Sequence record: MT161459.1
DNA length: 64,000 nucleotides
Reading direction: 5' to 3' (one strand)
In this document: piece after piece, positions 19 to 12,155 of the stretch
Position numbering within the stretch: position 1 is the first letter of the stretch
Layout: each line of letters opens with the position of its first letter
Notes under the pieces: model-generated
Database searches by the model: none
What the model was told of the DNA's origin: nothing
The model's input: the letters and a program-made list of their open reading frames with translations, nothing else
Program-made: the position numbers and the translations under genes

Positions 19-93
19 GCGCTGATAGCCAAGCGGTTGGGCAAGTGATTGCAAATCACTTCTACATCGGTTCGAATCCGGTTCAGTGCTCCA
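19..93 (+). tRNA. tRNA-Cys(GCA)
   Basis: Acceptor GCGCTGA/TCAGTGC, anticodon arm AGTGA-TTGCAAA-TCACT, T loop TTCGAAT, encoded CCA. Confidence 0.93.
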
Positions 94-118
94 ATTTTAC
101 ATAGCCGAGAATTACACC

Positions 119-898
119 ATGAGCATGCCAAGTCGCATACATTTCTACAAGAATGGCTTTCCCGTTGCCTCTGCGTTTATCAACTGCGGTTGGTACTACG
201 ACGAGATCGAAATCATTAAGACTCTGCTCCGTTATGTGGATCAGGATTGGAACCATTGCGTAGCGTATAACGTCACGTACTACAAAGATCAACTCGAATG
301 TCAACTCGAGACACTGCTTCTTGCAAATGAAGCTCGTGCCGAATTAGCGAAGAAAGAACGCGAAGCTCGGGCACTGGACAATCGCACCACGATGATGACT
401 ATCGTGAAAGGACGTGCTATTCCCAAGCTAATTGCAGAGGAAATCTGTAGCGTTCAACCGATGGCTGATGCTAATGGGAAAATGTTCAAACCGGAAACGT
501 TCAGCAAATATGTAGATGAGCTTCCGCCATACACTGCGGTAGAGCACGTCAAACTCCGAGCTGAGCATTGGACTGTTATTACGACTGCAGCTTTGCAAGC
601 TCTACGTAATGTCTGGTCTGCTGATGTAATGCACGCGAAGGTCCATCACGCTACAGAGCGTTATCTGGCCGTCGAGCTCAGCATCGCTTACCCAACAAAT
701 CTATCGAAGAAGACTATCTTCTTTGGCAACATAGATCTTACATCCGCCGAGACTTTCAACAAAGATCTTCGCCGGTTGAAGAGTAATCTAGTGCTGAAAA
801 GCATTGGAATGAAGGATTCGTTTGTGATGGATAATGACGTAATGTTCATGTATCCGGATAGAATCGATTTCAGCAAAATCAAACACGAATTAAAGTGA
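119..898 (+). CDS. hypothetical protein
   Basis: Long ORF; the track start at 86 overlaps tRNA-Cys so ATG 119 is preferred. Confidence 0.75.
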   Translation: MSMPSRIHFYKNGFPVASAFINCGWYYDEIEIIKTLLRYVDQDWNHCVAYNVTYYKDQLECQLETLLLANEARAELAKKEREARALDNRTTMMTIVKGRAIPKLIAEEICSVQPMADANGKMFKPETFSKYVDELPPYTAVEHVKLRAEHWTVITTAALQALRNVWSADVMHAKVHHATERYLAVELSIAYPTNLSKKTIFFGNIDLTSAETFNKDLRRLKSNLVLKSIGMKDSFVMDNDVMFMYPDRIDFSKIKHELK

Positions 899-959
899 GG
901 TTGATTATGTCACCGCTAAACGCGATGGAAAGCCGCTAGGCAGAAAAGGTAAGAACACA

Positions 960-1265
960 GTGTACATCAGCGGGCATTCCAGCGATGGGAAGCCAGTGCT
1001 TCGGAACGTGTTTTACCAATACGAGACAAACGGCGTACCGCTAGATCTTTTGATCGAGCAATTCTATGCTAATGGGTATCTGATAGACTGGCTACAGTTC
1101 TACGATGATGCTGTTGCTATAGGATGGAAGTGCGAAACTATTCTCAAGCGTATTGGATATGCTTTTGAAGAAGTGTTTAGTCTTGATGAAAGTGAGCGGA
1201 TAATAGCTTCATTGAAGAGATTCAGAACTTACCCGACAGTTAGTCTGATGAAGACCTTACCTTAG
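960..1265 (+). CDS. small protein resembling a fragment of alanyl-tRNA synthetase
   Basis: VFYQYETNGVPLDLL..IDWLQF aligns by eye with the AlaRS motif AFxLYDTYGFPxDLT..VDxxGF. Confidence 0.55.
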   Translation: MYISGHSSDGKPVLRNVFYQYETNGVPLDLLIEQFYANGYLIDWLQFYDDAVAIGWKCETILKRIGYAFEEVFSLDESERIIASLKRFRTYPTVSLMKTLP

Positions 1266-1456
1266 GTCAGATCTTTGAATACCGAGAATCGTTACTGCAA
1301 CCAAAACTTAAAAACAATGGAAGCGTCCTCGTGATGCAATGGTAGTGAACTGAACCCAACAGTCCAAAATGCGTGGATTAGTCATCTACATGGGAACAAA
1401 CGATTCTGTCGACTACCTTAACTAATGCTTCATTTCGATGGAGCATGTGTTAAAGT

Positions 1457-1531
1457 GCCTGTATAGTGTTAATGGTAACATGCCGTCCTTCCAAGTCGGA
1501 GTTCCGAGTTCGAGTCTCGATACAGGCTCCA
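1457..1531 (+). tRNA. tRNA-Gly(TCC)
   Basis: Acceptor GCCTGTA/TACAGGC, loop CTTCCAA, T loop TTCGAGT, CCA. Confidence 0.9.
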
Positions 1532-1541
1532 AATTTATCAT

Positions 1542-1618
1542 GGGGAATTAGCTCAGCTGGAACGAGCACCTGCCTTGCACGCAGGGGGTCATCGGTTCGA
1601 ACCCGATATTCTCCACCA
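1542..1618 (+). tRNA. tRNA-Ala(TGC)
   Basis: CCTGC-CTTGCAC-GCAGG arm, G3:U70 identity pair, CCA. Confidence 0.95.
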
Positions 1619-1642
1619 ATTTCAAAAACGAGAAAATACACT

Positions 1643-1843
1643 ATGATCTTTCTTGCACGGATTGAATACAATGAAATGCACTATCAAGGTAAGATTCGCT
1701 ATCTATCAGCTACCAAGTTGGTACACGCAGAGACTGCCGATGACGTAGAGCAGAAAGTAATAGATTTCTACGACAAGAAGTCTCGCGAATATGACGTGTA
1801 TTACAGCGTCAGATCCGTCGAGGTGGAAGAACCAATTTTATAA
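1643..1843 (+). CDS. hypothetical protein
   Basis: 66-aa ORF between tRNAs, GAG before ATG 1643. Confidence 0.65.
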   Translation: MIFLARIEYNEMHYQGKIRYLSATKLVHAETADDVEQKVIDFYDKKSREYDVYYSVRSVEVEEPIL

Positions 1844-1903
1844 CCATTTGGCTATCAGCTCACCGTTGAAAGAATACGGACAAGTCGGCTCGACCAAACG
1901 GTT
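1842..1903 (+). ncRNA. candidate small structured RNA
   Basis: Closing stem AACCATTTGG/CCAAACGGTT and inner hairpin CCGT-TGAAAGAAT-ACGG. Confidence 0.35.
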
Positions 1904-1906
1904 CAT

Positions 1907-1980
1907 AGGGGATTAGCCTAGTGGTTAGGCAGCGGATTCCAAATCCGCCTAGGAGGTTTCGAATACTTCATCCCCTGCCA
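1907..1980 (+). tRNA. tRNA-Trp(CCA)
   Basis: AGGGGAT/ATCCCCT, GCGGA-TTCCAAA-TCCGC, CCA. Confidence 0.92.
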
Positions 1981-2030
1981 ATTTCAAGAGATCTCATCAT
2001 TCCCAATTAAAGATCTCGTATTTACAACAT

Positions 2031-2105
2031 CGGTGATTCGGCAAGGGGTATGTCACTTGCTTTGGGAGCAAGCATTCGTAGGTTCGATTCCTACATCACC
2101 GACCA
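2031..2105 (+). tRNA. tRNA-Pro(TGG)
   Basis: CGGTGAT/ATCACCG, CTTGC-TTTGGGA-GCAAG, T loop TTCGATT, CCA. Confidence 0.92.
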
Positions 2106-2113
2106 ATTTCAAC

Positions 2114-2190
2114 GCGTCCTTAGCTTAGCTGGTTAGAGCAGCAGACTCTTAATTTGAAGGTCCTCGGTTCGATCCCGAGAGGACGCACCA
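2114..2190 (+). tRNA. tRNA-Lys(CTT)
   Basis: GCGTCCT/AGGACGC, loop CTCTTAA, T loop TTCGATC, CCA. Confidence 0.88.
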
Positions 2191-2198
2191 ATTTCAAT

Positions 2199-2270
2199 AC
2201 CCGTTAGAGCTCAATGAGCGCCTGACAAATGTGATGGAGGAAACCAGTGAAAGACTGGTGACGGGTACCA
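2199..2270 (+). ncRNA. tRNA-like RNA with degenerate D loop, anticodon arm and T loop
   Basis: Acceptor ACCCGTT/GACGGGT + A-CCA; D stem GCTC-AAT-GAGC; T arm ACCAG-TGAAAGA-CTGGT; anticodon stem mostly unpaired. Confidence 0.65.
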
Positions 2271-2277
2271 TTTCAAT

Positions 2278-2354
2278 ACGCCTTTAGCTCAATTGGATAG
2301 AGCAATCGGCTTTTAACCGATAGGTTCTGGGATCATGCCCCAGAGGGCGTACCA
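2278..2354 (+). tRNA. tRNA-Lys(TTT), non-canonical T loop
   Basis: ATCGG-CTTTTAA-CCGAT; T arm CTGGG-ATCATGC-CCCAG; CCA. Confidence 0.85.
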
Positions 2355-2359
2355 TATTC

Positions 2360-2605
2360 GCAAGAATCGAGCTGGTATGAGTACCTCAGCTCGTTAAATT
2401 ATCAAACGGTATCCGCGATGCGCTCGGTCAGCCAATCCGTAATGGATAAGCAGACTATCAACAGTAAGCGGCTGTATTGGTTCAACCTTCTCCCACGTCA
2501 GTGGTGTCAGGGTAGGATGATGTGGGGTTTCCCAAGTAGGCCACAGAAAATGTGATGTCCCAACGAAACGACAGCGACCCACGTTAAACGTTCATGTCTG
2601 TCAAC
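2360..2605 (+). ncRNA. candidate ~240-nt structured RNA between tRNAs
   Basis: No + strand ORF in the track; hairpins CGAGCTG..CAGCTCG, ATCC-GTAAT-GGAT, ACAG..CTGT, CCAC-GTCA-GTGG, and AGCCAAT/ATTGGTT pairing. Confidence 0.45.
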
Positions 2606-2614
2606 AAATTTTAG

Positions 2615-2691
2615 AGGGGATTCGCCTAGCTGGCCTAAGGCAGTGGACTTTGAATTCACTATCACTGGTTCGAATCCAGTATCCCCCGCCA
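2615..2691 (+). tRNA. tRNA-Gln(TTG)
   Basis: GTGGA-CTTTGAA-TTCAC, T loop TTCGAAT, CCA; A1:C72 mismatch. Confidence 0.9.
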
Positions 2692-2694
2692 ATT

Positions 2695-2763
2695 TGGTTG
2701 CATTCTCGATAGCCGTCCTGAGAAAATGAGATCGGGACTAAGCTAAAGAACATAGTGCAACCA
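2695..2763 (+). ncRNA. tRNA-sized long hairpin ending in CCA
   Basis: TGGTTGCA/TGCAACCA terminal stem, inner TTCT/AGAA, TAGC/GCTA, GTCCTG/CGGGAC. Confidence 0.45.
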
Positions 2764-2771
2764 TTGCTTTT

Positions 2772-2863
2772 GGAAGTGTGCCAGAGAGGCTGAATGGGCC
2801 AGCTTGGAAAGCTGGTGACGGCCAACAGGTCGTCCGTAGGTTCGAATCCTACCACTTCCGCCA
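2772..2863 (+). tRNA. tRNA-Ser(GGA)
   Basis: GGAAGTG/CACTTCC, CCAGC-TTGGAAA-GCTGG, long variable arm, G73, CCA. Confidence 0.95.
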
Positions 2864-2906
2864 ATTATTCACGATCGTGCAGCAGCACGATGAGAGGTAT
2901 CAGTAG

Positions 2907-3338
2907 ATGCAAAACCTAGCAAGTCTCTACGTCGGTATGGTAGAGCACATTATGGAATTTCAAAAAGATCGAACCGACATCGATCCACGATGCTACTGCA
3001 AAGAAGCGTTCCTTCGGGATTGCAGGACAATTTCTATCGATATGGGTAGAATGACTTGCAAATCTGTAGCGGCAATGACCCTTGCTCAAAAGCATTGCGG
3101 AGCTGTTGTCGTTATGAATGGAGCTCTTCGAGATTGGATCCTGGGACACCCTGGCATTGATCGGAGTCGAGTATTCACAGCAAGGGACTTTATCAAAGAG
3201 CTGCAGGAGAATGGATCTCATTACCGTATTGTGGTAATCGATGAGCCTAAATTCATCTCTGAGAAAATGGTTCGCGAGATCGTCAAGTTGTCTGCCGACA
3301 CAGGCGTGGAACATATCGTTCGTCTTGGAACACAATGA
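2907..3338 (+). CDS. hypothetical protein with degenerate P-loop NTPase-like motifs
   Basis: GRMTCKS (Walker A-like) and IVVIDEP (Walker B-like); GAGG RBS. Confidence 0.6.
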   Translation: MQNLASLYVGMVEHIMEFQKDRTDIDPRCYCKEAFLRDCRTISIDMGRMTCKSVAAMTLAQKHCGAVVVMNGALRDWILGHPGIDRSRVFTARDFIKELQENGSHYRIVVIDEPKFISEKMVREIVKLSADTGVEHIVRLGTQ

Positions 3339-3343
3339 ACAAA

Positions 3344-3440
3344 GGAAGCGTGGCAGAGTCCGGCTTATTGCAACTGACTTGAAATCAGTCGACGGTGGCA
3401 ATCCCATCGTCCGTGGGTTCAAATCCTACCGCTTCCGCCA
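3344..3440 (+). tRNA. tRNA-Ser(TGA)
   Basis: GGAAGCG/CGCTTCC, ACTGA-CTTGAAA-TCAGT, long variable arm, CCA. Confidence 0.95.
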
Positions 3441-3446
3441 AACAAT

Positions 3447-3511
3447 GAGCTCTTAGGTTAGTGAAAACCGCTGGCTGTCCAATGCCAGAGACGCGTAAGC
3501 AGAGCTCGCCA
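3447..3511 (+). ncRNA. tRNA-like RNA with 8-nt anticodon loop and vestigial T arm
   Basis: Perfect GAGCTCT/AGAGCTC + G-CCA; D arm GGTT-AGTGAA-AACC; CTGGC-TGTCCAAT-GCCAG; T arm reduced to GC-GTAA-GC. Confidence 0.65.
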
Positions 3512-3516
3512 AACAC

Positions 3517-3601
3517 GCGGATGTGGTGAAATTGGCAGTCACACTAGATTTAGGATCTAGCGCCTTCGGGCATGTCGGTTCGAGTCCGACCATCCGCACC
3601 A
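3517..3601 (+). tRNA. tRNA-Leu(TAG)
   Basis: GCGGATG/CATCCGC, CTAGA-TTTAGGA-TCTAG, variable arm, CCA. Confidence 0.95.
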
Positions 3602-3608
3602 GAATTAC

Positions 3609-3634
3609 AAGAGCCCATATGGGCTCTTTTTGTT
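3609..3634 (+). terminator. intrinsic terminator after the tRNA run
   Basis: AAGAGCCC-ATAT-GGGCTCTT + U tract. Confidence 0.85.
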
Positions 3635-3637
3635 GCC

Positions 3638-3644
3638 CTAAATA
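3638..3644 (+). promoter_or_regulatory. putative late promoter CTAAATA (also 11669, 17479, 17872, 33568, 45395, 56370, 62010)
   Basis: Recurs in intergenic positions shortly upstream of starts; resembles T4 gp55 late promoter TATAAATA. Confidence 0.6.
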
Positions 3645-3662
3645 CAAGAAAAGGAGATCGTA

Positions 3663-4052
3663 ATGGACTTTGCAAACTTTTCTAGTACACAGTCTAAGTC
3701 ACCGGCCATCGGTAATCTCATTACCAAGTTGCTAAAGAGTGTTCCGTACGTTCACCACGAGCATCTGACTACTACGTCATACGAACGTCATATCACCCTT
3801 CAACAGTATTACGAAGGGATGCCAGGAGTAGTCGATACGCTAGCGGAAGCTAGTATTGCTCGTGGGTATCCACAGAGTTTCGATGCTCAGTTCAATCTGA
3901 TATCATTCGAGCAACTCTTAAACGACGCGATGTCGGAGTGTAATGCAGTTCACAAGATTCTCGAGAAAGATGGTATGTGGGATCTGACCAATGCTCTGGA
4001 AGATATCATGACCTTCATTTCATCCGTACAGTACAAATTGCGTTTGAAATAG
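3663..4052 (+). CDS. ferritin/Dps-like four-helix protein
   Basis: HHEHL...YERH..LQQYYE....D.LAE ferritin-like pattern; AGGAG RBS. Confidence 0.65.
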   Translation: MDFANFSSTQSKSPAIGNLITKLLKSVPYVHHEHLTTTSYERHITLQQYYEGMPGVVDTLAEASIARGYPQSFDAQFNLISFEQLLNDAMSECNAVHKILEKDGMWDLTNALEDIMTFISSVQYKLRLK

Positions 4053-4081
4053 TTGACTAAGCGGGTTATCCATGAGATGAT
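4053..4081 (+). promoter_or_regulatory. sigma70-like early promoter
   Basis: TTGACT-17-GATGAT. Confidence 0.55.
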
Positions 4082-4092
4082 CTGCTTTATAA

Positions 4093-4169
4093 GGCCCCTT
4101 ATCATAATCGGTTAGTGGAGCGTCCTCATAAGGCGTAACGTCTCGGTTCGAGTCCGAGAGGGGCCACCA
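4093..4169 (+). tRNA. tRNA-Ile2(CAT, lysidine type); Met less likely
   Basis: GGCCCCT/AGGGGCC-A-CCA acceptor as in enterobacterial Ile2; loop CTCATAA. Confidence 0.8.
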
Positions 4170-6778: not shown

Positions 6779-7372
6779 ATGGCTAAACTTTTCTATTTTT
6801 ACGCAGCAATGAACAGTGGTAAGTCCACTCAACTGCTCCAAGTGGCACACAATTACACAGAACGCGATCAGAACGTGTTGCTACTGAAACCGAAGATCGA
6901 CACCAGAACGTCCAACACCATCGGATCTCGGATCGGGATCTCCAAAGCGTGCTTGTCCATCGACGTTGACGTCAATCTGGTTGACTTCTTCAAAGCGCAG
7001 ACGACCAAATACGATTGCATCCTCGTTGATGAAGCTCAGTTCCTGACGGAAGATCAAGTATGGCAACTGTCTGATATAGTGGATAAGCTCCACATCCCAG
7101 TCATGTGTTACGGACTGCGAACTGACTTCTTGGGCAATCTATTCGAAGGATCCAGGACGTTGTTGGCCATCGCTGATAGCATTACGGAAGTTCGCGGGAT
7201 CTGCGAATGTGGCCGGAAGGCTTGCATGGTTGCTCGGATTGACTCCAATGGAAATGCGATCCTCCGAGGAGAGCAGGTTTGCATTGGGGCTGAGGAGACG
7301 TACGTCAGTTTTTGTCGTGCTTGCTGGAAAAAGAAGTTGAAAACTAACTGGACTCGTAAGACAATCTATTAA
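6779..7372 (+). CDS. tdk: thymidine kinase (type II)
   Basis: YAAMNSGKS P-loop, VDEAQF, YGLRTDF, C-terminal Zn cysteines; ATG 6779 after GGGG. Confidence 0.95.
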   Translation: MAKLFYFYAAMNSGKSTQLLQVAHNYTERDQNVLLLKPKIDTRTSNTIGSRIGISKACLSIDVDVNLVDFFKAQTTKYDCILVDEAQFLTEDQVWQLSDIVDKLHIPVMCYGLRTDFLGNLFEGSRTLLAIADSITEVRGICECGRKACMVARIDSNGNAILRGEQVCIGAEETYVSFCRACWKKKLKTNWTRKTIY

Positions 7373-7394: not shown

Positions 7395-8789
7395 ATGTCA
7401 ATGTTGTTCGATGCAATGTCTGAAAAAGACGCCCGCACTATGAACGGTGCAATCACGCACTCCACATCCGGTCAAGCCAACGTAGACTTGTTCTTCATCG
7501 TTGGCGCTTCTCGCGGCAAGAAAATTCGCGCTGAGTTTGCCAAAGCATATCGCGAGAATATGGACTACGCTGTCCGCATTCTTCAATGGGCGCGCGACGT
7601 TCGTGGTGGTGCTGGTGAGCGCGGTATCTTCATCGATTTGCTCCGCACCCTGTACACTCTGAATCGTGCGCATGCAGTATCCATTCTGTATAAGACTCCA
7701 GAGATTGGCCGCTGGAAGGATGTGGTTGAGATGTTCAACTCTCCTCTGCGCGCGGAAGTTCTGGATATGTTAGAGTTCGCTCTGCGTTCCGAGGACAGTC
7801 TGGCTGCTAAGTGGATCCCGCGTAAAGGTCCGGTAGCAAGCGCTCTGGCTCGCCGCATGAAGTGGAGCTCTAAACAGCTTCGTCAGACGCTGGTTGCTCT
7901 GAGCAACACAGTTGAGCAGAAGATGTGCGCGCGTCAGTGGAACGACATTGATTTCAGTAAGCTCCCGTCGATCGCATCCAGTCGCTACCAGAAGGCGTTC
8001 CATCGCCAAGCTCCAACCGCGTACACCAAGTACCTGGAGAGTCTGGAGAAAGGCGAGACCAAGATCAATGCCGGCGCCATCTATCCGCACACTATCGTCG
8101 GGAATCTGAGCAATGGCGTAGCTGCTGCTGCAGAGGCTCAGTGGAAAGCTCTTCCGAACTACATGGAAGGTACCAATGAGCGAATCCTGCCAGTGGTTGA
8201 CGTTTCTGGATCCATGAGCTGTCCGGCCGGCGGCAGCGGTTCGGTTAGTTGCATGACCGTAGCCATTTCGCTGGGTTTGTACATCTCCGAGCGCAATGAA
8301 GGGATTTTCCACAACCAGTTTGTGACGTTCAGCGAAGAACCAACATTCGTGACCCTGACCAAGCCGACTCTCCAAGGCCGTTGCAGCGAGATGTCTCGTT
8401 CGGATTGGGGTTACAATACCGATCTGCAGCGCACATTCTCTATCCTGTTGGATCGTGCAGTCAAATGCGCAGTCCCGCAAGATCAAATGCCGACCAAGAT
8501 CCTGATCTTGTCCGACATGGAGTTCGACGCAGCGTGTGATCGTGCCACCAACTACGACGCCATTGAGCGTAAGTATGCCGCCGCAGGATACGAGATGCCA
8601 TCCATCGTATTCTGGAACCTGAATGCTCGTGCCGGCAATGTACCAGTCAAGGCAGGCGTTCGCAACACTGCTCTGATCTCGGGTTTCTCTCCAGCTATCT
8701 TGACTTCTGTTCTGGGATGTCAGACAATGACTCCATTGTCAGTCATGCAAGACGCGATTATGAAAGATCGCTACGACTGGATTGTCTAA
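7395..8789 (+). CDS. DUF2828/TROVE(Ro60)-like helical protein with C-terminal vWA domain
   Basis: DLFF.VGASRG, RDVRGGAGER, LAAKWIPR, MIDAS DVSGS, ILSDMEFD, IVFWNL. Confidence 0.8.
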   Translation: MSMLFDAMSEKDARTMNGAITHSTSGQANVDLFFIVGASRGKKIRAEFAKAYRENMDYAVRILQWARDVRGGAGERGIFIDLLRTLYTLNRAHAVSILYKTPEIGRWKDVVEMFNSPLRAEVLDMLEFALRSEDSLAAKWIPRKGPVASALARRMKWSSKQLRQTLVALSNTVEQKMCARQWNDIDFSKLPSIASSRYQKAFHRQAPTAYTKYLESLEKGETKINAGAIYPHTIVGNLSNGVAAAAEAQWKALPNYMEGTNERILPVVDVSGSMSCPAGGSGSVSCMTVAISLGLYISERNEGIFHNQFVTFSEEPTFVTLTKPTLQGRCSEMSRSDWGYNTDLQRTFSILLDRAVKCAVPQDQMPTKILILSDMEFDAACDRATNYDAIERKYAAAGYEMPSIVFWNLNARAGNVPVKAGVRNTALISGFSPAILTSVLGCQTMTPLSVMQDAIMKDRYDWIV

Positions 8790-9198: not shown

Positions 9199-9542
9199 AT
9201 CTGGATAACATCTACAGCTTCTGTGACCAGTTTGTGGTAGCATTGAATGAAGCTCAGTTGTATGACAGCAACGAGTGGGGAATGTACCACGATGTGGCCA
9301 TTTCGCGTCACAGTCGTGCTGCGAAGCTCACCTTTGCTATCCCATATTTCATGCCTGAAATGTACGACGTGTTGTTGCCACTCCACTGCTTCAACGATGA
9401 GCGTACTATGGAGAAGCATCTTGCGGACTCCATTCAGACCATGCGTCTCTTTGCAGCGAATCATAGGGCGTCTCAAACTGAATATCAAATGGCCCTAGAG
9501 CATCGCGCTCGTCAACGTAAATGGTGGATGTTTTGGAAATAG
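9195..9542 (+). CDS. hypothetical protein
   Basis: ATGA overlap with upstream gene. Confidence 0.6.
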   Translation: MNLDNIYSFCDQFVVALNEAQLYDSNEWGMYHDVAISRHSRAAKLTFAIPYFMPEMYDVLLPLHCFNDERTMEKHLADSIQTMRLFAANHRASQTEYQMALEHRARQRKWWMFWK

Positions 9543-9943
9543 AAACCCAATCTGATGTAGTCAAAACGCTAAAGATCCTGTACGACATGGGCGATCAAAT
9601 CGCCAAGATGTTGACCGATTCGTGCTACTATGCTCATTACACAGTCACATCGTGCAAATGGGAAATGGATGACGTTACCATCGATGACTCCGATGGTTGT
9701 TGTGCTATGAAGTTCGTTTCGCGAGAGGACAACGTATACCGTTGGTTTGCAGAGCTCGATCGAATGTTGGATCCGGAGTACGTACAATCCGAACTGCGGA
9801 GTGTCCGCAATCTGACCGATCAATACAAAGCTAAGATGGCAGAATCTCGTAGACTCAAGGCCGACTCTGTCATTGCTGAAACCGAACGTCGTGAACGTCG
9901 CGAGTTGGAACGTCTCCAAGCAAAGTATGGGACTCAGTCATGA
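9521..9943 (+). CDS. hypothetical protein, C-terminal coiled coil
   Basis: Ends ERRELERLQAKYG; start uncertain. Confidence 0.6.
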   Translation: MVDVLEIETQSDVVKTLKILYDMGDQIAKMLTDSCYYAHYTVTSCKWEMDDVTIDDSDGCCAMKFVSREDNVYRWFAELDRMLDPEYVQSELRSVRNLTDQYKAKMAESRRLKADSVIAETERRERRELERLQAKYGTQS

Positions 9944-11172: not shown

Positions 11173-11672
11173 TCTACGCTCAAGTTGCTCGGATGTTAGC
11201 CATCCAATCCAGTCGTCGGATCTATATCGGATCTAGTGCATTGTGGAAGTTTCGTCAGCGGGCATCAGAAGCTGTATGCATCAAGTGCCAGTATGAGGAT
11301 GACTGGAAGAAAAGCCATCCCGAGATGTATCCACTCGATCCTGCAGCAGTTGAAACGTGGCGCGCTTACACGGACTGTCTGTCTGGGACATTGATTCTTG
11401 GCGAGACTAAAGCTACATTGCGCGCAGAAATCGTCAATCCGAATATGTTCTCAGTTCGCGGTCGTTCGTTAGAGAAGACTATGGAGTTCGAATTGACTCC
11501 AGAGCTGACGATGGATATCTTTGGGGAATACATCAAATCTCACTGCCACCATGTAGTCGAAGATGAGTACGAGCGTCGAGAGATTGCTCGAGTGACTCAA
11601 GAACAAGAGGAGCTGATGGCTACCATGCTGTCCGAGGCCGCGTCAATGGATTGTGACTGGGAAAACTCCTAA
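11169..11672 (+). CDS. hypothetical protein
   Basis: ATGA overlap, 167 aa. Confidence 0.7.
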   Translation: MIYAQVARMLAIQSSRRIYIGSSALWKFRQRASEAVCIKCQYEDDWKKSHPEMYPLDPAAVETWRAYTDCLSGTLILGETKATLRAEIVNPNMFSVRGRSLEKTMEFELTPELTMDIFGEYIKSHCHHVVEDEYERREIARVTQEQEELMATMLSEAASMDCDWENS

Positions 11673-11683
11673 ATAAGTTTAGG

Positions 11684-11715
11684 TGTGGGGTAAGTCAGGA
11701 GATACTTACCCCACA
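11684..11715 (+). other. perfect 12-bp inverted repeat
   Basis: TGTGGGGTAAGT-N8-ACTTACCCCACA between CTAAATA and the tRNA-like RNA. Confidence 0.8.
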
Positions 11716-11720
11716 GAGAG

Positions 11721-11855
11721 ATAATACCGCGATCGAGTAGCTCAATGGTAGAGCAACGTAAAATGCATCCTGTCAAGGATGAATTCTGCAATCAAATCGC
11801 CTGTTAAGCCGTAGGTTGTGTGGTTCGAATCCGCGCCTCGATCGCAGTATTATTT
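11721..11855 (+). ncRNA. tRNA-Asn(GTT)-derived RNA with 40-nt insertion in the anticodon stem and extended acceptor stem
   Basis: GATCGAG/CTCGATC acceptor, GCTC-AATGGTA-GAGC D arm, ACG[40 nt]GC-CTGTTAA-GCCGT, T loop TTCGAAT, no CCA, flanks ATAATAC/GTATTAT pair. Confidence 0.75.
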
Positions 11856-11882
11856 CAACAAAGCACCACAAGGTAAAACGTC

Positions 11883-12155
11883 ATGGATTTTTTGACTGAG
11901 AAGCAGTTGCGTAATCTGACCACTGAACGTCTGAATGCTCTTCGCAAGACCGTTTTGAAAGCTCGTGCATCAGCTGAATACAACGCCGATCAAGATCCCA
12001 GCTCACAGGCTGACAAGGAACGCGCTCGCGGTTTGATCGAGTACTACGAACTGATCAAGTCCGTCATGGACGATCGTGAACACATTGAACGCAGCACCAA
12101 ACCGAAACAGAAGGGTCACAATCGTGATTCGATCAAAAGGATGACTTGGGAATGA
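11883..12155 (+). CDS. hypothetical protein
   Basis: AAGGT RBS. Confidence 0.65.
   Translation: MDFLTEKQLRNLTTERLNALRKTVLKARASAEYNADQDPSSQADKERARGLIEYYELIKSVMDDREHIERSTKPKQKGHNRDSIKRMTWE

What the first reader, a model, noticed from the sequence alone, without database searches (positions are those of the whole stretch)
11669..11855. tRNA-Asn interrupted by a 40-nt insert in the anticodon stem, under its own late promoter
Seen: removing 11759-11798 restores ACGGC-CTGTTAA-GCCGT and a near-canonical tRNA-Asn with G73; the insert carries its own hairpin CATCCT-GTCA-AGGATG; the acceptor is extended by GC/GC and ATAATAC/GTATTAT; there is no CCA; upstream are CTAAATA and a perfect 12-bp hairpin. 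Known: GUN-anticodon tRNAs are TGT substrates and colicin E5-type targets; non-canonical tRNA introns are mainly archaeal. Inference: either a novel spliced phage tRNA (healed by phage RNA repair enzymes) or a stable decoy presenting a GUU loop.
Basis: partly seen in the sequence, partly recalled or inferred. Interest (0 to 1): 0.8.

Follow-up and report, generated by a model that had tools for sequence, protein, structure and literature searches.

The report
tRNA carrying a Ro60-protein docking module
The "interrupted tRNA-Asn" is real and is not a broken gene: its 40-base insert is a conserved RNA module that recurs next to phage genes for a Ro60-like ring protein (one lies 2.9 kb upstream here), so the RNA is most likely a tRNA-shaped partner ("Y RNA"-like) of that protein and not simply a tRNA awaiting splicing.

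Summary
The insert is not a lesion. The same module (UAAAA lead, covarying 7-bp hairpin, about 3 nt, CYGCAAU, A/U linker) interrupts the 5' strand of the anticodon stem after nt 28 or 29. It does so in about 20 phage tRNA lineages with 10 different anticodons, and in none of 185,579 cellular reference genomes scanned. A model trained on other phages finds it once in the window (42 bits, E=6.5e-8).

The new finding is a linked gene. Window 7395-8789 (DUF2828+DUF7788) folds as a Ro60/TROVE ring plus vWA domain. All 17 isolate-phage records with the insert encode it, usually within 3 kb on the same strand (Fisher p=3e-9). Stand-alone small RNAs beside this gene in Listeria, Campylobacter, Bacillus and Mycobacterium phages carry the same helix-end module, circularly permuted.

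Best reading (0.58): a Y-RNA-like partner built on a complete tRNA-Asn scaffold. Splicing to a working tRNA (0.25) is not excluded. It is a new variant of the known Ro60-Y RNA kind. All evidence is computational.

The parts
7395..8789 (+). Gene for a Ro60-like RNA-binding ring protein (AHP1_171, 464 aa; DUF2828 + DUF7788/vWA with an intact MIDAS motif, DxSGSM at 269-274)
   Evidence: Pfam DUF2828 E=1e-25, DUF7788 E=3e-50, weak Ro60 vWA. AF2 model pLDDT 86, pTM 0.86. Foldseek top 9 PDB hits are all Ro60/TROVE, TM 0.52-0.66. Invariant MIDAS residues. Recurs beside insert-bearing tRNAs.
11684..11715 (+). Perfect 12-bp hairpin (8-nt loop) upstream of the RNA, with no U tract; possibly a processing or stabilising structure
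   Evidence: Fold. Not scored as a terminator. Also present in the decayed copy in front of the second tRNA-Asn.
11721..11730 (+). 5' strand of the helix that extends the acceptor stem (ATAATAC-C-GC)
   Evidence: The Aeh1-group copies have an equivalent GC/GC plus 10-bp extension.
11731..11758 (+). tRNA body, 5' part: acceptor 11731-37, U8 A9, D arm 11740-54, anticodon-stem nt 27-29 (ACG, 11756-58)
   Evidence: Rfam tRNA alignment; ARAGORN on the joined flanks.
11759..11798 (+). 40-nt inserted module: lead UAAAAUG 11759-65, hairpin 11766-81 (loop GUCA), spacer AAUU 11782-85, CUGCAAU 11786-92, linker CAAAUC 11793-98
   Evidence: Model R1, built from 14 inserts of other phages, scores 42.2 bits (E=6.5e-8) at 11759-11792; the next best hit in 64 kb scores 11.6 bits. 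Family tables; covariation.
11799..11844 (+). tRNA body, 3' part: nt 30-31 (GC), loop CUGUUAA (anticodon GUU 11803-05), GCCGU 11808-12, variable loop, 6-bp T arm 11818-36, acceptor 3' strand 11837-43, G73 11844
   Evidence: The only substitution in close relatives that falls in the T arm (11833 G>A) keeps the pair.
11845..11853 (+). 3' strand of the acceptor-stem extension (C-A-GTATTAT); no CCA

Best explanation
The locus encodes a tRNA-Asn-shaped non-coding RNA whose 40-nt insert is a docking module for the phage's Ro60-like ring protein, encoded 2.9 kb upstream on the same strand. It is a Y-RNA analogue built on a complete, unpermuted tRNA.

Shown here:
- The RNA folds as a cloverleaf with a three-way junction in the anticodon arm.
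- The junction has an A-rich strand (UAAAAU) on the 5' side of a G-N-N-A-capped hairpin and N3-4 + CYGCAAU on its 3' side.
- This helix-end module is shared, circularly permuted, with small stem-closed RNAs that lie beside Ro-like genes in unrelated phages.

Inferred:
- The Ro-like ring binds this module.
- The RNA is cut out of a polycistronic transcript through its long terminal helix.
- The tRNA body, with a native-looking GUU anticodon loop, is the second functional end. As in bacterial YrlA/Ro60/PNPase particles, it may tether the ring to a tRNA-recognising factor or exoribonuclease during infection, for tRNA or structured-RNA surveillance or to counter host attack on tRNAs.
For: Family and structure:
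- The insert sits at the same site in about 20 lineages with Asn, Asp, Ile, CAT, Gly, Pro, Gln, Thr, Val and Arg anticodons.
- Hairpin covariation: 96.9% of cells paired, 7/7 pairs with double changes, score 0.956 vs 0.337 +/- 0.056 (0/500 shuffles); slid controls score 0.34 or less.
- Model R1 gives a single hit in the window.

Protein:
- DUF2828 + DUF7788; full-length structural match to Ro60/TROVE, including Thermus phage Ro60; labelled 'Ro-like RNA binding protein' in mycobacteriophage records.

Linkage:
- 9 of 20 loci share this family.
- All 14 Aeromonas phage records with the element are exactly the Aeromonas T4-like records with the gene, 2.4-2.9 kb apart. B3, B23 and BUCT-ZZ01 have both.
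- Only 710 of 50,697 phage records have the gene.
- Control of 159 loci: 11/26 insert loci against 1/133 others (p=3e-9). The one exception, L084, turned out to hold two insert-tRNAs plus three stand-alone units directly upstream of the gene.

Shared module:
- 10 CAGCAA[AU] in 2,047 nt of gaps beside Ro-like genes of P100, CP30A, PBC2 and MiniMac (0.25 expected). Each lies 0-3 nt after a stem strand, and the partner strand is preceded by an A-rich run such as UAAAAAU.
- The MiniMac unit continues into a YrlA-type tRNA-like core.

Non-decoding traits:
- No CCA, a 16-bp terminal helix and a 6-bp T stem.
- A same-anticodon ordinary tRNA exists in Ahp1, L012, L035 and BUCT-ZZ01, only 65-70% identical to the insert-bearing copy.
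- The third Aeh1 tRNA-like RNA carries the module in place of an anticodon loop.

Precedent:
- Y RNAs are encoded within 4 kb of Ro60 on the same strand and mimic tRNA (PMC4201824). A phage Ro60 binds adjacent Y-like RNAs and host PNPase (PMC12135203).
Against: - There are no binding or expression data; the link rests on genomic association and motif sharing.
- After conceptual removal, nearly all members give a perfect 5-bp anticodon stem and a 7-nt loop with U33 and R37, across ten anticodons. That is what a spliced, decoding tRNA would need and is not required of a mere scaffold.
- Cyanophage and several metagenomic copies have normal ends with an encoded CCA.
- Two lineages (L025/L039/L105/L121 and L052) have no Ro-like gene within 7-9 kb.
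- Many phages with the gene (FelixO1-like, KVP40-like) lack the embedded form.
- The motif differs from the published Ro-binding GNCGAAN0-1G, Rfam YrlA does not hit the window, and Pfam TROVE does not hit the protein.
- The outer 3-bp helix (G29-U-A/U-G-C) is invariant or broken by the C variant, so it is untested.
Confidence: 0.58

Rival explanations
1. A genuine, protein-dependent tRNA intron. The 40 nt are cut out and the halves ligated to give a working tRNA-Asn. The conserved motifs are recognition signals for the splicing machinery, possibly with the Ro-like ring as the intron-recognising or chaperoning subunit.
For: All 14 hand-parsed members, and the later ones, become ARAGORN-valid tRNAs only after the flanks are joined. 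Canonical anticodon loops with ten identities are preserved. Several members have standard termini with CCA. Within a genome the same insert sits in different tRNA bodies (BUCT-ZZ01 CAT and GTT; B3 TCG and GTT), as expected of a mobile intron. Short 'enigmatic' introns were reported in Lak megaphage tRNAs (10.1101/356790), and a Lak phage has a distant copy of the Ro-like gene.
Against: No splicing mechanism fits: there is no bulge-helix-bulge (exon 1 ...GCAA-CG| has no UUGC partner before the 3' site), the insert is too small for group I/II, and Rfam detects no ribozyme. The 3' boundary lies 4-10 nt after CYGCAAU, with no conserved junction sequence. The module is absent from the cellular genomes scanned, so no host pathway is implied. 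Four phages carry a normal tRNA with the same anticodon. The same module occurs in RNAs with no tRNA to restore and in the third Aeh1 RNA, which has no anticodon loop. The Ahp1 copy has a 6-bp T stem and no CCA.
Confidence: 0.25
2. A decoy or bait for host anticodon nucleases or other tRNA-targeting defences. It would present a GUU anticodon loop on a tRNA body that cannot enter the ribosome, acting on its own or with the Ro-like protein. This is compatible with the best explanation as a statement of purpose.
For: A native-like anticodon loop is kept although the RNA looks non-decoding in Aeromonas phages. It duplicates an ordinary same-anticodon tRNA. It is known that phage tRNAs counter tRNA-cleaving defences (PMC11464382, listed).
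Against: Ten different anticodons carry the module, so no single nuclease specificity explains the family. Some members have non-canonical loops (L084 copy 1, Aeh1 third RNA). There is no linkage to any defence or anti-defence gene.
Confidence: 0.1
3. A decaying tRNA pseudogene, or a selfish mini-insertion without function (the GenBank annotation is tRNA-Pseudo).
For: GenBank annotation. Aberrant T stem and no CCA. A decayed copy of the 5' half lies upstream of the second tRNA-Asn. One close relative has G39>U, which breaks the 31-39 pair.
Against: The locus is syntenic, and the module is conserved between Ahp1 and the Aeh1 group, whose flanking rI.1 proteins are only 61% identical. There is 83.5% identity over 96 nt to a cyanophage copy. 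Covariation in the hairpin is strong. The fold z-score is -7.6. The RNA is tightly linked to a conserved protein gene.
Confidence: 0.04

Closest known systems
Bacterial/phage YrlA-type Y RNAs with Ro60 (Rsr) (Chen et al. 2014, PMC4201824; Rfam RF02553)
   Same: A non-coding RNA encoded within 4 kb of, and on the same strand as, a Ro60-type ring protein. It contains a tRNA-like fold, and the presumed protein-binding part sits on the anticodon-stem side of that fold. A mycobacteriophage RNA beside a DUF2828 gene carries both the CAGCAAU motif and a YrlA-type core.
   Different: YrlA is a permuted, partial tRNA mimic: its ends lie in the 'anticodon' stem, its acceptor is closed by a loop, and it has no anticodon loop. 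This RNA is a complete tRNA in normal order with a real GUU anticodon loop. The module is an internal hairpin insert. The motif is CNGCAA(U/A), not GNCGAAN0-1G. Rfam YrlA does not hit it. The protein belongs to Pfam DUF2828/DUF7788, not TROVE.
Thermus phage phiLo Ro60 with Yrl1/Yrl2 (PMC12135203; PDB 9KOP, 9L5Y)
   Same: A phage-encoded Ro60-fold protein with small partner RNAs encoded next to it. It is a structural match to the Ahp1 protein (TM 0.52-0.55).
   Different: The phiLo RNAs are stand-alone stem-bulge-stem RNAs with a CGAA motif and no tRNA body. Binding and PNPase recruitment were shown experimentally there; nothing has been shown here.
Stand-alone CAGCAAU units beside DUF2828 genes (Listeria P100, Campylobacter CP30A, Bacillus PBC2, Mycobacterium MiniMac, contig L084)
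   Same: The same helix-end module: an A-rich run before one strand and 0-4 nt + C-N-G-C-A-A-U/A after the other.
   Different: In these units the helix is closed by the RNA's own 5'/3' ends and the loop is 26-104 nt. In Ahp1 the helix is capped by a tetraloop and the 'loop' is the whole tRNA, which is a circular permutation. As far as the held literature shows, these units are themselves undescribed.
Archaeal non-canonical tRNA introns (bulge-helix-bulge, e.g. at 29/30)
   Same: A short insert in the anticodon stem, at a position also used in Archaea. The joined exons give a canonical tRNA.
   Different: There is no BHB motif, no splicing endonuclease is known in bacteria or these phages, and there is a conserved sequence motif, which BHB introns lack.
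'Enigmatic introns' of Lak megaphage tRNAs (Devoto et al., 10.1101/356790 / PMC6784885)
   Same: Short, highly conserved inserts in phage tRNA genes of unknown mechanism. Lak-B2 encodes a distant DUF2828 homologue.
   Different: Their sequences were not compared here. At least one Lak intron is itself tRNA-like, resembling L012 8073-8215 and not the Ahp1 module.

Membership tests
Canonical tRNA (Rfam RF00005) | Cloverleaf that scores above the curated threshold | tested here: met
   31.2 bits against a threshold of 29, but only with a 51-nt gap in the anticodon arm.
Canonical tRNA (Rfam RF00005) | Continuous 5-bp anticodon stem, 5-bp T stem, single-stranded 3' end (CCA encoded or addable) | tested here: not met
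   The stem is interrupted by 40 nt. The T stem has 6 bp. The 3' end is buried in a 16-bp helix with no CCA. ARAGORN does not call it.
Archaeal/eukaryal-type tRNA intron | Bulge-helix-bulge (two 3-nt bulges 4 bp apart) at the splice sites | tested here: not met
   Exon 1 ends ...GCAA-CG|U, and the required UUGC + 2 nt before the 3' site is absent in Ahp1 and the other members (sequences).
Group I / group II self-splicing intron or small self-cleaving ribozyme | Catalytic core recognisable by Rfam; adequate size | tested here: not met
   The insert is 40 nt. No Rfam family other than tRNA is found at E<=1 in 11600-11950 or in eight related loci.
Y RNA / YrlA | Encoded within 4 kb of a Ro60 orthologue on the same strand (criterion of PMC4201824) | tested here: met
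   Gene at 7395-8789 (+), RNA at 11731-11844 (+), 2.9 kb apart. The distance is 2.4-2.9 kb in 13 other Aeromonas phage records.
Y RNA / YrlA | tRNA-like domain | tested here: met
   A full cloverleaf, which is more complete than in YrlA.
Y RNA / YrlA | Terminal stem with internal loop carrying GNCGAAN0-1G; match to RF02553 | tested here: not met
   No YrlA hit in the window. The motif here is CUGCAAU at the base of an internal hairpin.
Y RNA / YrlA | Physical association with the Ro60-type protein | not testable with these tools
   Needs RIP or EMSA.
Ro60/TROVE protein (for AHP1_171) | HEAT-repeat ring followed by a vWA domain with MIDAS | tested here: met
   AF2 pLDDT 86. Foldseek top 9 hits are all Ro60/TROVE over about 500 aligned columns. 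DxSGSM, T342 and D374 are invariant.
Ro60/TROVE protein (for AHP1_171) | Sequence match to Pfam TROVE or to solved Ro60 sequences | tested here: not met
   Pfam gives DUF2828/DUF7788, with only a sub-threshold Ro60 vWA hit (18.8 bits against 27.7). phmmer against PDB finds no Ro60. About 14% identity in the structural alignments.
UAAAA-hairpin-CYGCAAU insert family (defined here) | Lead, 7-bp hairpin, about 3-nt spacer and CYGCAAU in the 5' strand of a tRNA anticodon stem | tested here: met
   42.2 bits, E=6.5e-8 to model R1, which was built without Ahp1.

The most novel reading that the evidence does not exclude
The inserts are true introns, and the Ro60-like ring is the intron-recognition subunit of a protein-dependent tRNA splicing (or splicing-coupled quality-control) pathway carried by phages. 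That would be the first non-self-splicing tRNA introns in the bacterial world, and a direct functional bridge between Ro60/Y RNA biology and tRNA splicing/repair.
Probability: 0.15. Interest if true: 0.9.

Novelty: new variant of a known kind. Interest (0 to 1): 0.7.

Why it matters
Ro60-Y RNA particles are conserved from bacteria to humans, yet why bacterial Y RNAs imitate tRNA, and how they arose, is unresolved. Here the presumed Ro-docking module sits inside otherwise complete tRNA genes of ten specificities. The same module also exists as small stand-alone RNAs, sometimes in one array upstream of the protein gene. That reads like a series of stages from tRNA to Y RNA.

It also gives several concrete leads:
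- A defined candidate RNA signature, CNGCAA(U/A) at a helix end, for a very large uncharacterised phage protein family (DUF2828/DUF7788: more than 7,800 relatives and 710 isolate genomes, including FelixO1-, KVP40-, P100- and mycobacteriophage groups).
- An explanation for a class of 'tRNA-Pseudo / tRNA-OTHER / intron-containing tRNA' annotations in phage genomes.
- A testable link to the unexplained 'tRNA introns' of huge phages.
- If the tRNA body recruits a tRNA-recognising factor, it could reveal how phages watch over or protect their tRNA supply.

Tried and rejected
- Homology to the T4 stable RNAs rnaC/rnaD: these were fetched and folded. rnaC has a T arm, but neither shares the module.
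- Bulge-helix-bulge, group I/II and small-ribozyme readings: there is no fitting structure and no Rfam hit.
- Pairing between the UAAAA lead and the A/U linker: possible in some members (BUCT_b, L129, L012) but not in Ahp1, Aeh1 or L127, so it is not a conserved feature (sequences).
- The upstream flanking ORF as a partner: AHP1_3271 and Aeh1 ORF147c are unrelated and have no Pfam hits.
- Cellular origin: the pattern scan of 185,579 reference genomes gave 34 hits. None was a genuine insert-bearing tRNA under the strict filter. L084 (a MAG contig, probably phage-derived) was recovered later.
- Stand-alone units in the window: none is convincing in 1-20 kb. The CAGCAAT at 6804 lies inside the thymidine kinase ORF.
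- Walking the L039 contig to find a Ro-like gene: none within 9 kb upstream or 7 kb downstream.
- MAFFT alignment of the whole anticodon arm (A1): the hairpin register was wrong, so it was replaced by a fixed-length core alignment (A3).
- Close relatives L091/L107/L136 are 98-100% identical and therefore nearly uninformative.
- Literature: nine searches found no description of this insert or of DUF2828 function.
Full report
**Identity of the window and check of the observation.** The window is the first 64 kb of Aeromonas phage Ahp1_CNU-2021 (MT161459.1, Straboviridae, 218 kb), and window coordinates equal record coordinates. GenBank annotates 11731-11844 as 'tRNA-OTHER / tRNA-Pseudo'. ARAGORN finds 12 ordinary tRNAs at 19-4169 but not this one. 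Rfam's tRNA model reaches it at 31.2 bits, just above threshold, with a 51-nt gap in the anticodon arm and one extra base pair in the T stem. The region folds far better than shuffles (z = -7.6).

**The insert defines a family.** A sensitive blastn of the element found matches that span the insert in 14 Aeromonas T4-like phage records (the Aeh1, PX29, phiAS5, AsFcp, Ah1, avDM12 and phiWae14 group, plus Ahp1 itself). It also matched three freshwater cyanophages: BUCT-ZZ01, B3 and B23. Reading those loci showed the same block at the same place. BUCT-ZZ01 and B3 each carry it in two different tRNA bodies.

Pattern scans of viral contigs and metagenomes added more lineages. After strict filtering there are about 20 distinct members with anticodons GTT, GTC, GAT, CAT, TCC, TGG, TTG, TGT, CAC and TCG. 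None of the 34 hits in 185,579 cellular reference genomes passed the filter as a genuine insert-bearing tRNA. The one genuine cellular-collection locus, L084, is a MAG contig with a phage-like tRNA array.

The architecture is constant:

| Order | Segment |
|---|---|
| 1 | insertion after nt 28 or 29 of the anticodon stem |
| 2 | lead UA(A/U/G)AA... |
| 3 | 6-8-bp hairpin, mostly with a G-N-N-A loop |
| 4 | spacer of about 3 nt, A/U-rich |
| 5 | CYGCAAU |
| 6 | A/U-rich linker of 4-10 nt |

On a gap-free 34-column alignment of 14 inserts from other phages, the hairpin shows 96.9% paired cells and compensatory double changes at all seven pairs. Its covariation score is 0.956 against 0.337 +/- 0.056 in shuffles (0/500) and at most 0.34 when the partners are slid. 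A covariance model built from that alignment, without Ahp1, finds exactly one significant match in the 64-kb window: 11759-11792, 42.2 bits, E = 6.5e-8. The next best hit scores 11.6 bits.

**Is it an intron?** Joining the flanks turns all 14 hand-parsed members into ARAGORN-valid tRNAs, and none is valid uninterrupted. That is the strongest argument for splicing. However, no known mechanism fits. There is no bulge-helix-bulge, 40 nt is far too small for group I or II, and Rfam detects no ribozyme. The 3' boundary lies at a variable distance from the conserved motif and has no junction consensus.

Several traits also speak against a plain decoding role:
- The Aeromonas copies have no CCA, and their ends are locked in a 16-18-bp helix. 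Ahp1 has a 6-bp T stem and PX29 a bulged one.
- At least four phages also carry an ordinary tRNA with the same anticodon. The two copies are only 65-70% identical, so the insert-bearing one is not a recent duplicate.
- Between Ahp1 and Aeh1 the insert plus anticodon loop is better conserved than the tRNA body.

The literature held here knows only 'enigmatic' short introns in Lak megaphage tRNAs, with no mechanism. No paper describing this insert was found.

**The linked gene.** An all-against-all comparison of ORFs in 20 insert-bearing loci showed one family of 460-560 aa in nine loci of different lineages, often directly adjacent to the tRNA. The window copy is the ORF at 7395-8789 (AHP1_171, 'hypothetical protein'), 2.9 kb upstream on the same strand. 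Pfam assigns DUF2828 + DUF7788, with a sub-threshold hit to the Ro60 vWA domain. A 28-sequence alignment shows an invariant MIDAS signature. The AlphaFold model (pLDDT 86, pTM 0.86) has Ro60/TROVE structures as its nine best PDB matches over the full length: Xenopus and human Ro60, and the Ro60 of Thermus phage phiLo, with TM 0.52-0.66 and probability 1.0. After these come only generic vWA domains. Mycobacteriophage curators already label this family 'Ro-like RNA binding protein'. It has more than 7,800 relatives in metagenomes and occurs in 710 of 50,697 phage records.

**Strength of the linkage.**
- The 14 Aeromonas records that carry the element are exactly the Aeromonas T4-like records that carry the gene, always 2.4-2.9 kb apart. 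The three cyanophages also have both.
- Gene order is conserved between Ahp1 and Aeh1: tk, Ro-like, small ORFs, tRNA-like RNA(s), rI.1 homologue (61% identity).
- As a control, a tblastn of the family against all 159 pattern-scan loci found it in 11 of 26 insert loci but in only 1 of 133 others (1.0 Mb; Fisher p = 3e-9). Most insert loci that lack it are short fragments or duplicates of lineages where the gene lies just outside the fetched stretch.
- By lineage, 10 of the 12 with at least 5 kb of context have the gene within about 4 kb. Two (the L025/L039 group and L052) do not, even after walking 9 kb upstream and 7 kb downstream in one case.

**The same module occurs in stand-alone RNAs next to the gene.** In Listeria phage P100, Campylobacter phage CP30A, Bacillus phage PBC2 and mycobacteriophage MiniMac, the Ro-like gene adjoins unannotated gaps. 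These gaps hold ten copies of CAGCAA[AU] on the gene's strand in 2,047 nt, against 0.25 expected and a maximum of 3 in 2,000 shuffles. Each copy lies 0-3 nt after the 5' strand of a 7-10-bp closing stem, and the 3' strand of that stem is preceded by an A-rich run, for example UAAAAAU or UAAAAAC in P100.

This is the arrangement of the Ahp1 insert (UAAAAUG - hairpin - AAUU - CUGCAAU) in circularly permuted form. In the stand-alone RNAs the helix is closed by the 5'/3' ends. In the insert it is capped by a tetraloop, and the tRNA takes the place of the loop.

The second MiniMac unit continues into a tRNA-like core that matches positions 23-89 of Rfam YrlA (E = 7e-7 locally). The motif lies where YrlA has its Ro-binding stem, on the anticodon-stem side. 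Contig L084 shows both forms together: two insert-bearing tRNAs followed by three stand-alone units (CAGCAAT, CTGCAAT, CAGCAAA), all on one strand immediately upstream of the Ro-like gene. The third Aeh1 tRNA-like RNA carries a weaker copy of the module in place of its anticodon loop.

**Interpretation.** Two facts are established elsewhere. Ro60 orthologues are encoded within 4 kb of, and on the same strand as, their Y RNAs, which in bacteria and phages mimic tRNA (PMC4201824). And a phage Ro60 binds adjacent Y-like RNAs and recruits host PNPase (PMC12135203).

The Ahp1 RNA meets the positional criterion and has a tRNA fold, but it differs from YrlA in three ways. Its topology is a complete, unpermuted tRNA with an anticodon loop. 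Its motif is CNGCAA(U/A) instead of GNCGAAN0-1G. Its protein belongs to a different sequence family. That survey used only TROVE-annotated proteins and discarded hits overlapping tRNA arrays, which would explain why this class escaped it.

I therefore read the 40-nt insert as the docking module for the Ro60-like protein, and the whole RNA as a Y-RNA analogue built on a tRNA-Asn scaffold (confidence about 0.58). Binding, processing through the terminal helix, and the role of the tRNA body as a tether are all inferences. The persistence of canonical anticodon arms across ten specificities remains the main argument for the rival view that the module is eventually removed. That rival (0.25) is compatible with the Ro-like protein acting on the precursor.

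**Promoter claim.** CTAAATA overlaps the stop codon of the upstream ORF and only partly matches the T4 late consensus. No sigma-70-like site lies directly upstream, and the 12-bp hairpin has no U tract. All neighbouring genes are on the same strand, so processing from a longer transcript is at least as likely as a dedicated promoter.

**Verdict.** The feature is a new variant of a known kind (Ro60-Y RNA systems) and belongs to a widespread, apparently undescribed family. All evidence is computational. The decisive experiments are a binding test and a junction/size test on RNA from infected cells.

Noticed in passing
MT161459.1 215641-215722 (locus L173 9642-9726), outside the window: Ahp1 has a second tRNA-Asn(GTT) with an encoded CCA and an unusual long variable arm (about 13 nt), a class-II-like shape that is not expected for tRNA-Asn.
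   Followed up: partly
L173 about 9537-9640 (record about 215536-215639): Directly upstream of that second tRNA-Asn lies a decayed copy of the element's upstream hairpin, 5' exon and insert start (ATAAGTTTA...ACG-AATGCATCCTGT-TAA). The local alignment scores 53 against 27.7 +/- 5.1 for shuffles. It looks like the product of a deletion between the two CCTGT repeats of an insert-bearing gene.
   Followed up: partly
L007 1351-1468 and 1618-1736 (Aeh1; the same in PX29, phiAS5, Ah1): The Aeh1 group has three tandem over-long tRNA-like RNAs between ORF147c and rI.1. The first has two T arms and a 13-bp terminal helix. The third has normal ends with CCA but a 53-nt loop with a hairpin + CCGCAAA in place of the anticodon loop; it is annotated variously as tRNA-Val or as a two-piece tRNA-Leu.
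   Followed up: partly
L012 8073-8215 and 10563-10676: The same 170-kb viral contig has a CAT-anticodon tRNA with an insert of about 70 nt in its anticodon loop that itself looks like a mini-tRNA (acceptor-like stem + T arm), reminiscent of the Lak phage 'intron that encodes a tRNA'. It also has another 114-nt tRNA with an unrelated insert.
   Followed up: no
L178 1468-2019 (Listeria phage P100): A ROOL-like large RNA (86 bits, below the 99.1 threshold, E=3e-16) lies in the tRNA region about 1 kb upstream of the Ro-like gene and its three CAGCAAU units.
   Followed up: no
L052 8087-8514: A GOLLD RNA (174 bits) sits inside the tRNA array of the viral contig that carries the insert-bearing tRNA-Val(CAC).
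   Followed up: no
L176 10238-10476 (Escherichia phage skuden, Felixounavirus): An unannotated gap in the tRNA array just downstream of the Ro-like gene holds an aberrant tRNA-like RNA (acceptor-like stem, T arm GGGGTTCAACTCCTC, terminal GCCA, no normal D arm). Other gaps of about 250 nt in the array fold stably.
   Followed up: no
L084 6380-6860 (JAZQNA010000062.1, Ca. Absconditabacterales MAG contig): There is an array of two insert-bearing tRNAs and three stand-alone CNGCAA units directly upstream of a Ro-like gene. The first tRNA has a non-canonical loop, TCAGGGT. Whether the contig is a prophage or a mis-binned phage was not examined.
   Followed up: partly
L177 198-1276 (Mycobacterium phage MiniMac): A band-7-like membrane protein gene and a tRNA-Tyr lie about 1.2-2.3 kb upstream of the Ro-like gene.
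   Followed up: no
L166 4942-5299 / L018 11626-11985: The viral contig lineage that carries the insert-bearing tRNA-Asp(GTC) also encodes a tmRNA about 0.7 kb away.
   Followed up: no
window 11808 and 11833: In near-identical metagenome relatives the only substitutions inside the element are 11833 G>A (T stem, U.G to U-A; L091, L107, L136) and 11808 G>T (L091 only), which breaks the loop-closing 31-39 pair.
   Followed up: yes
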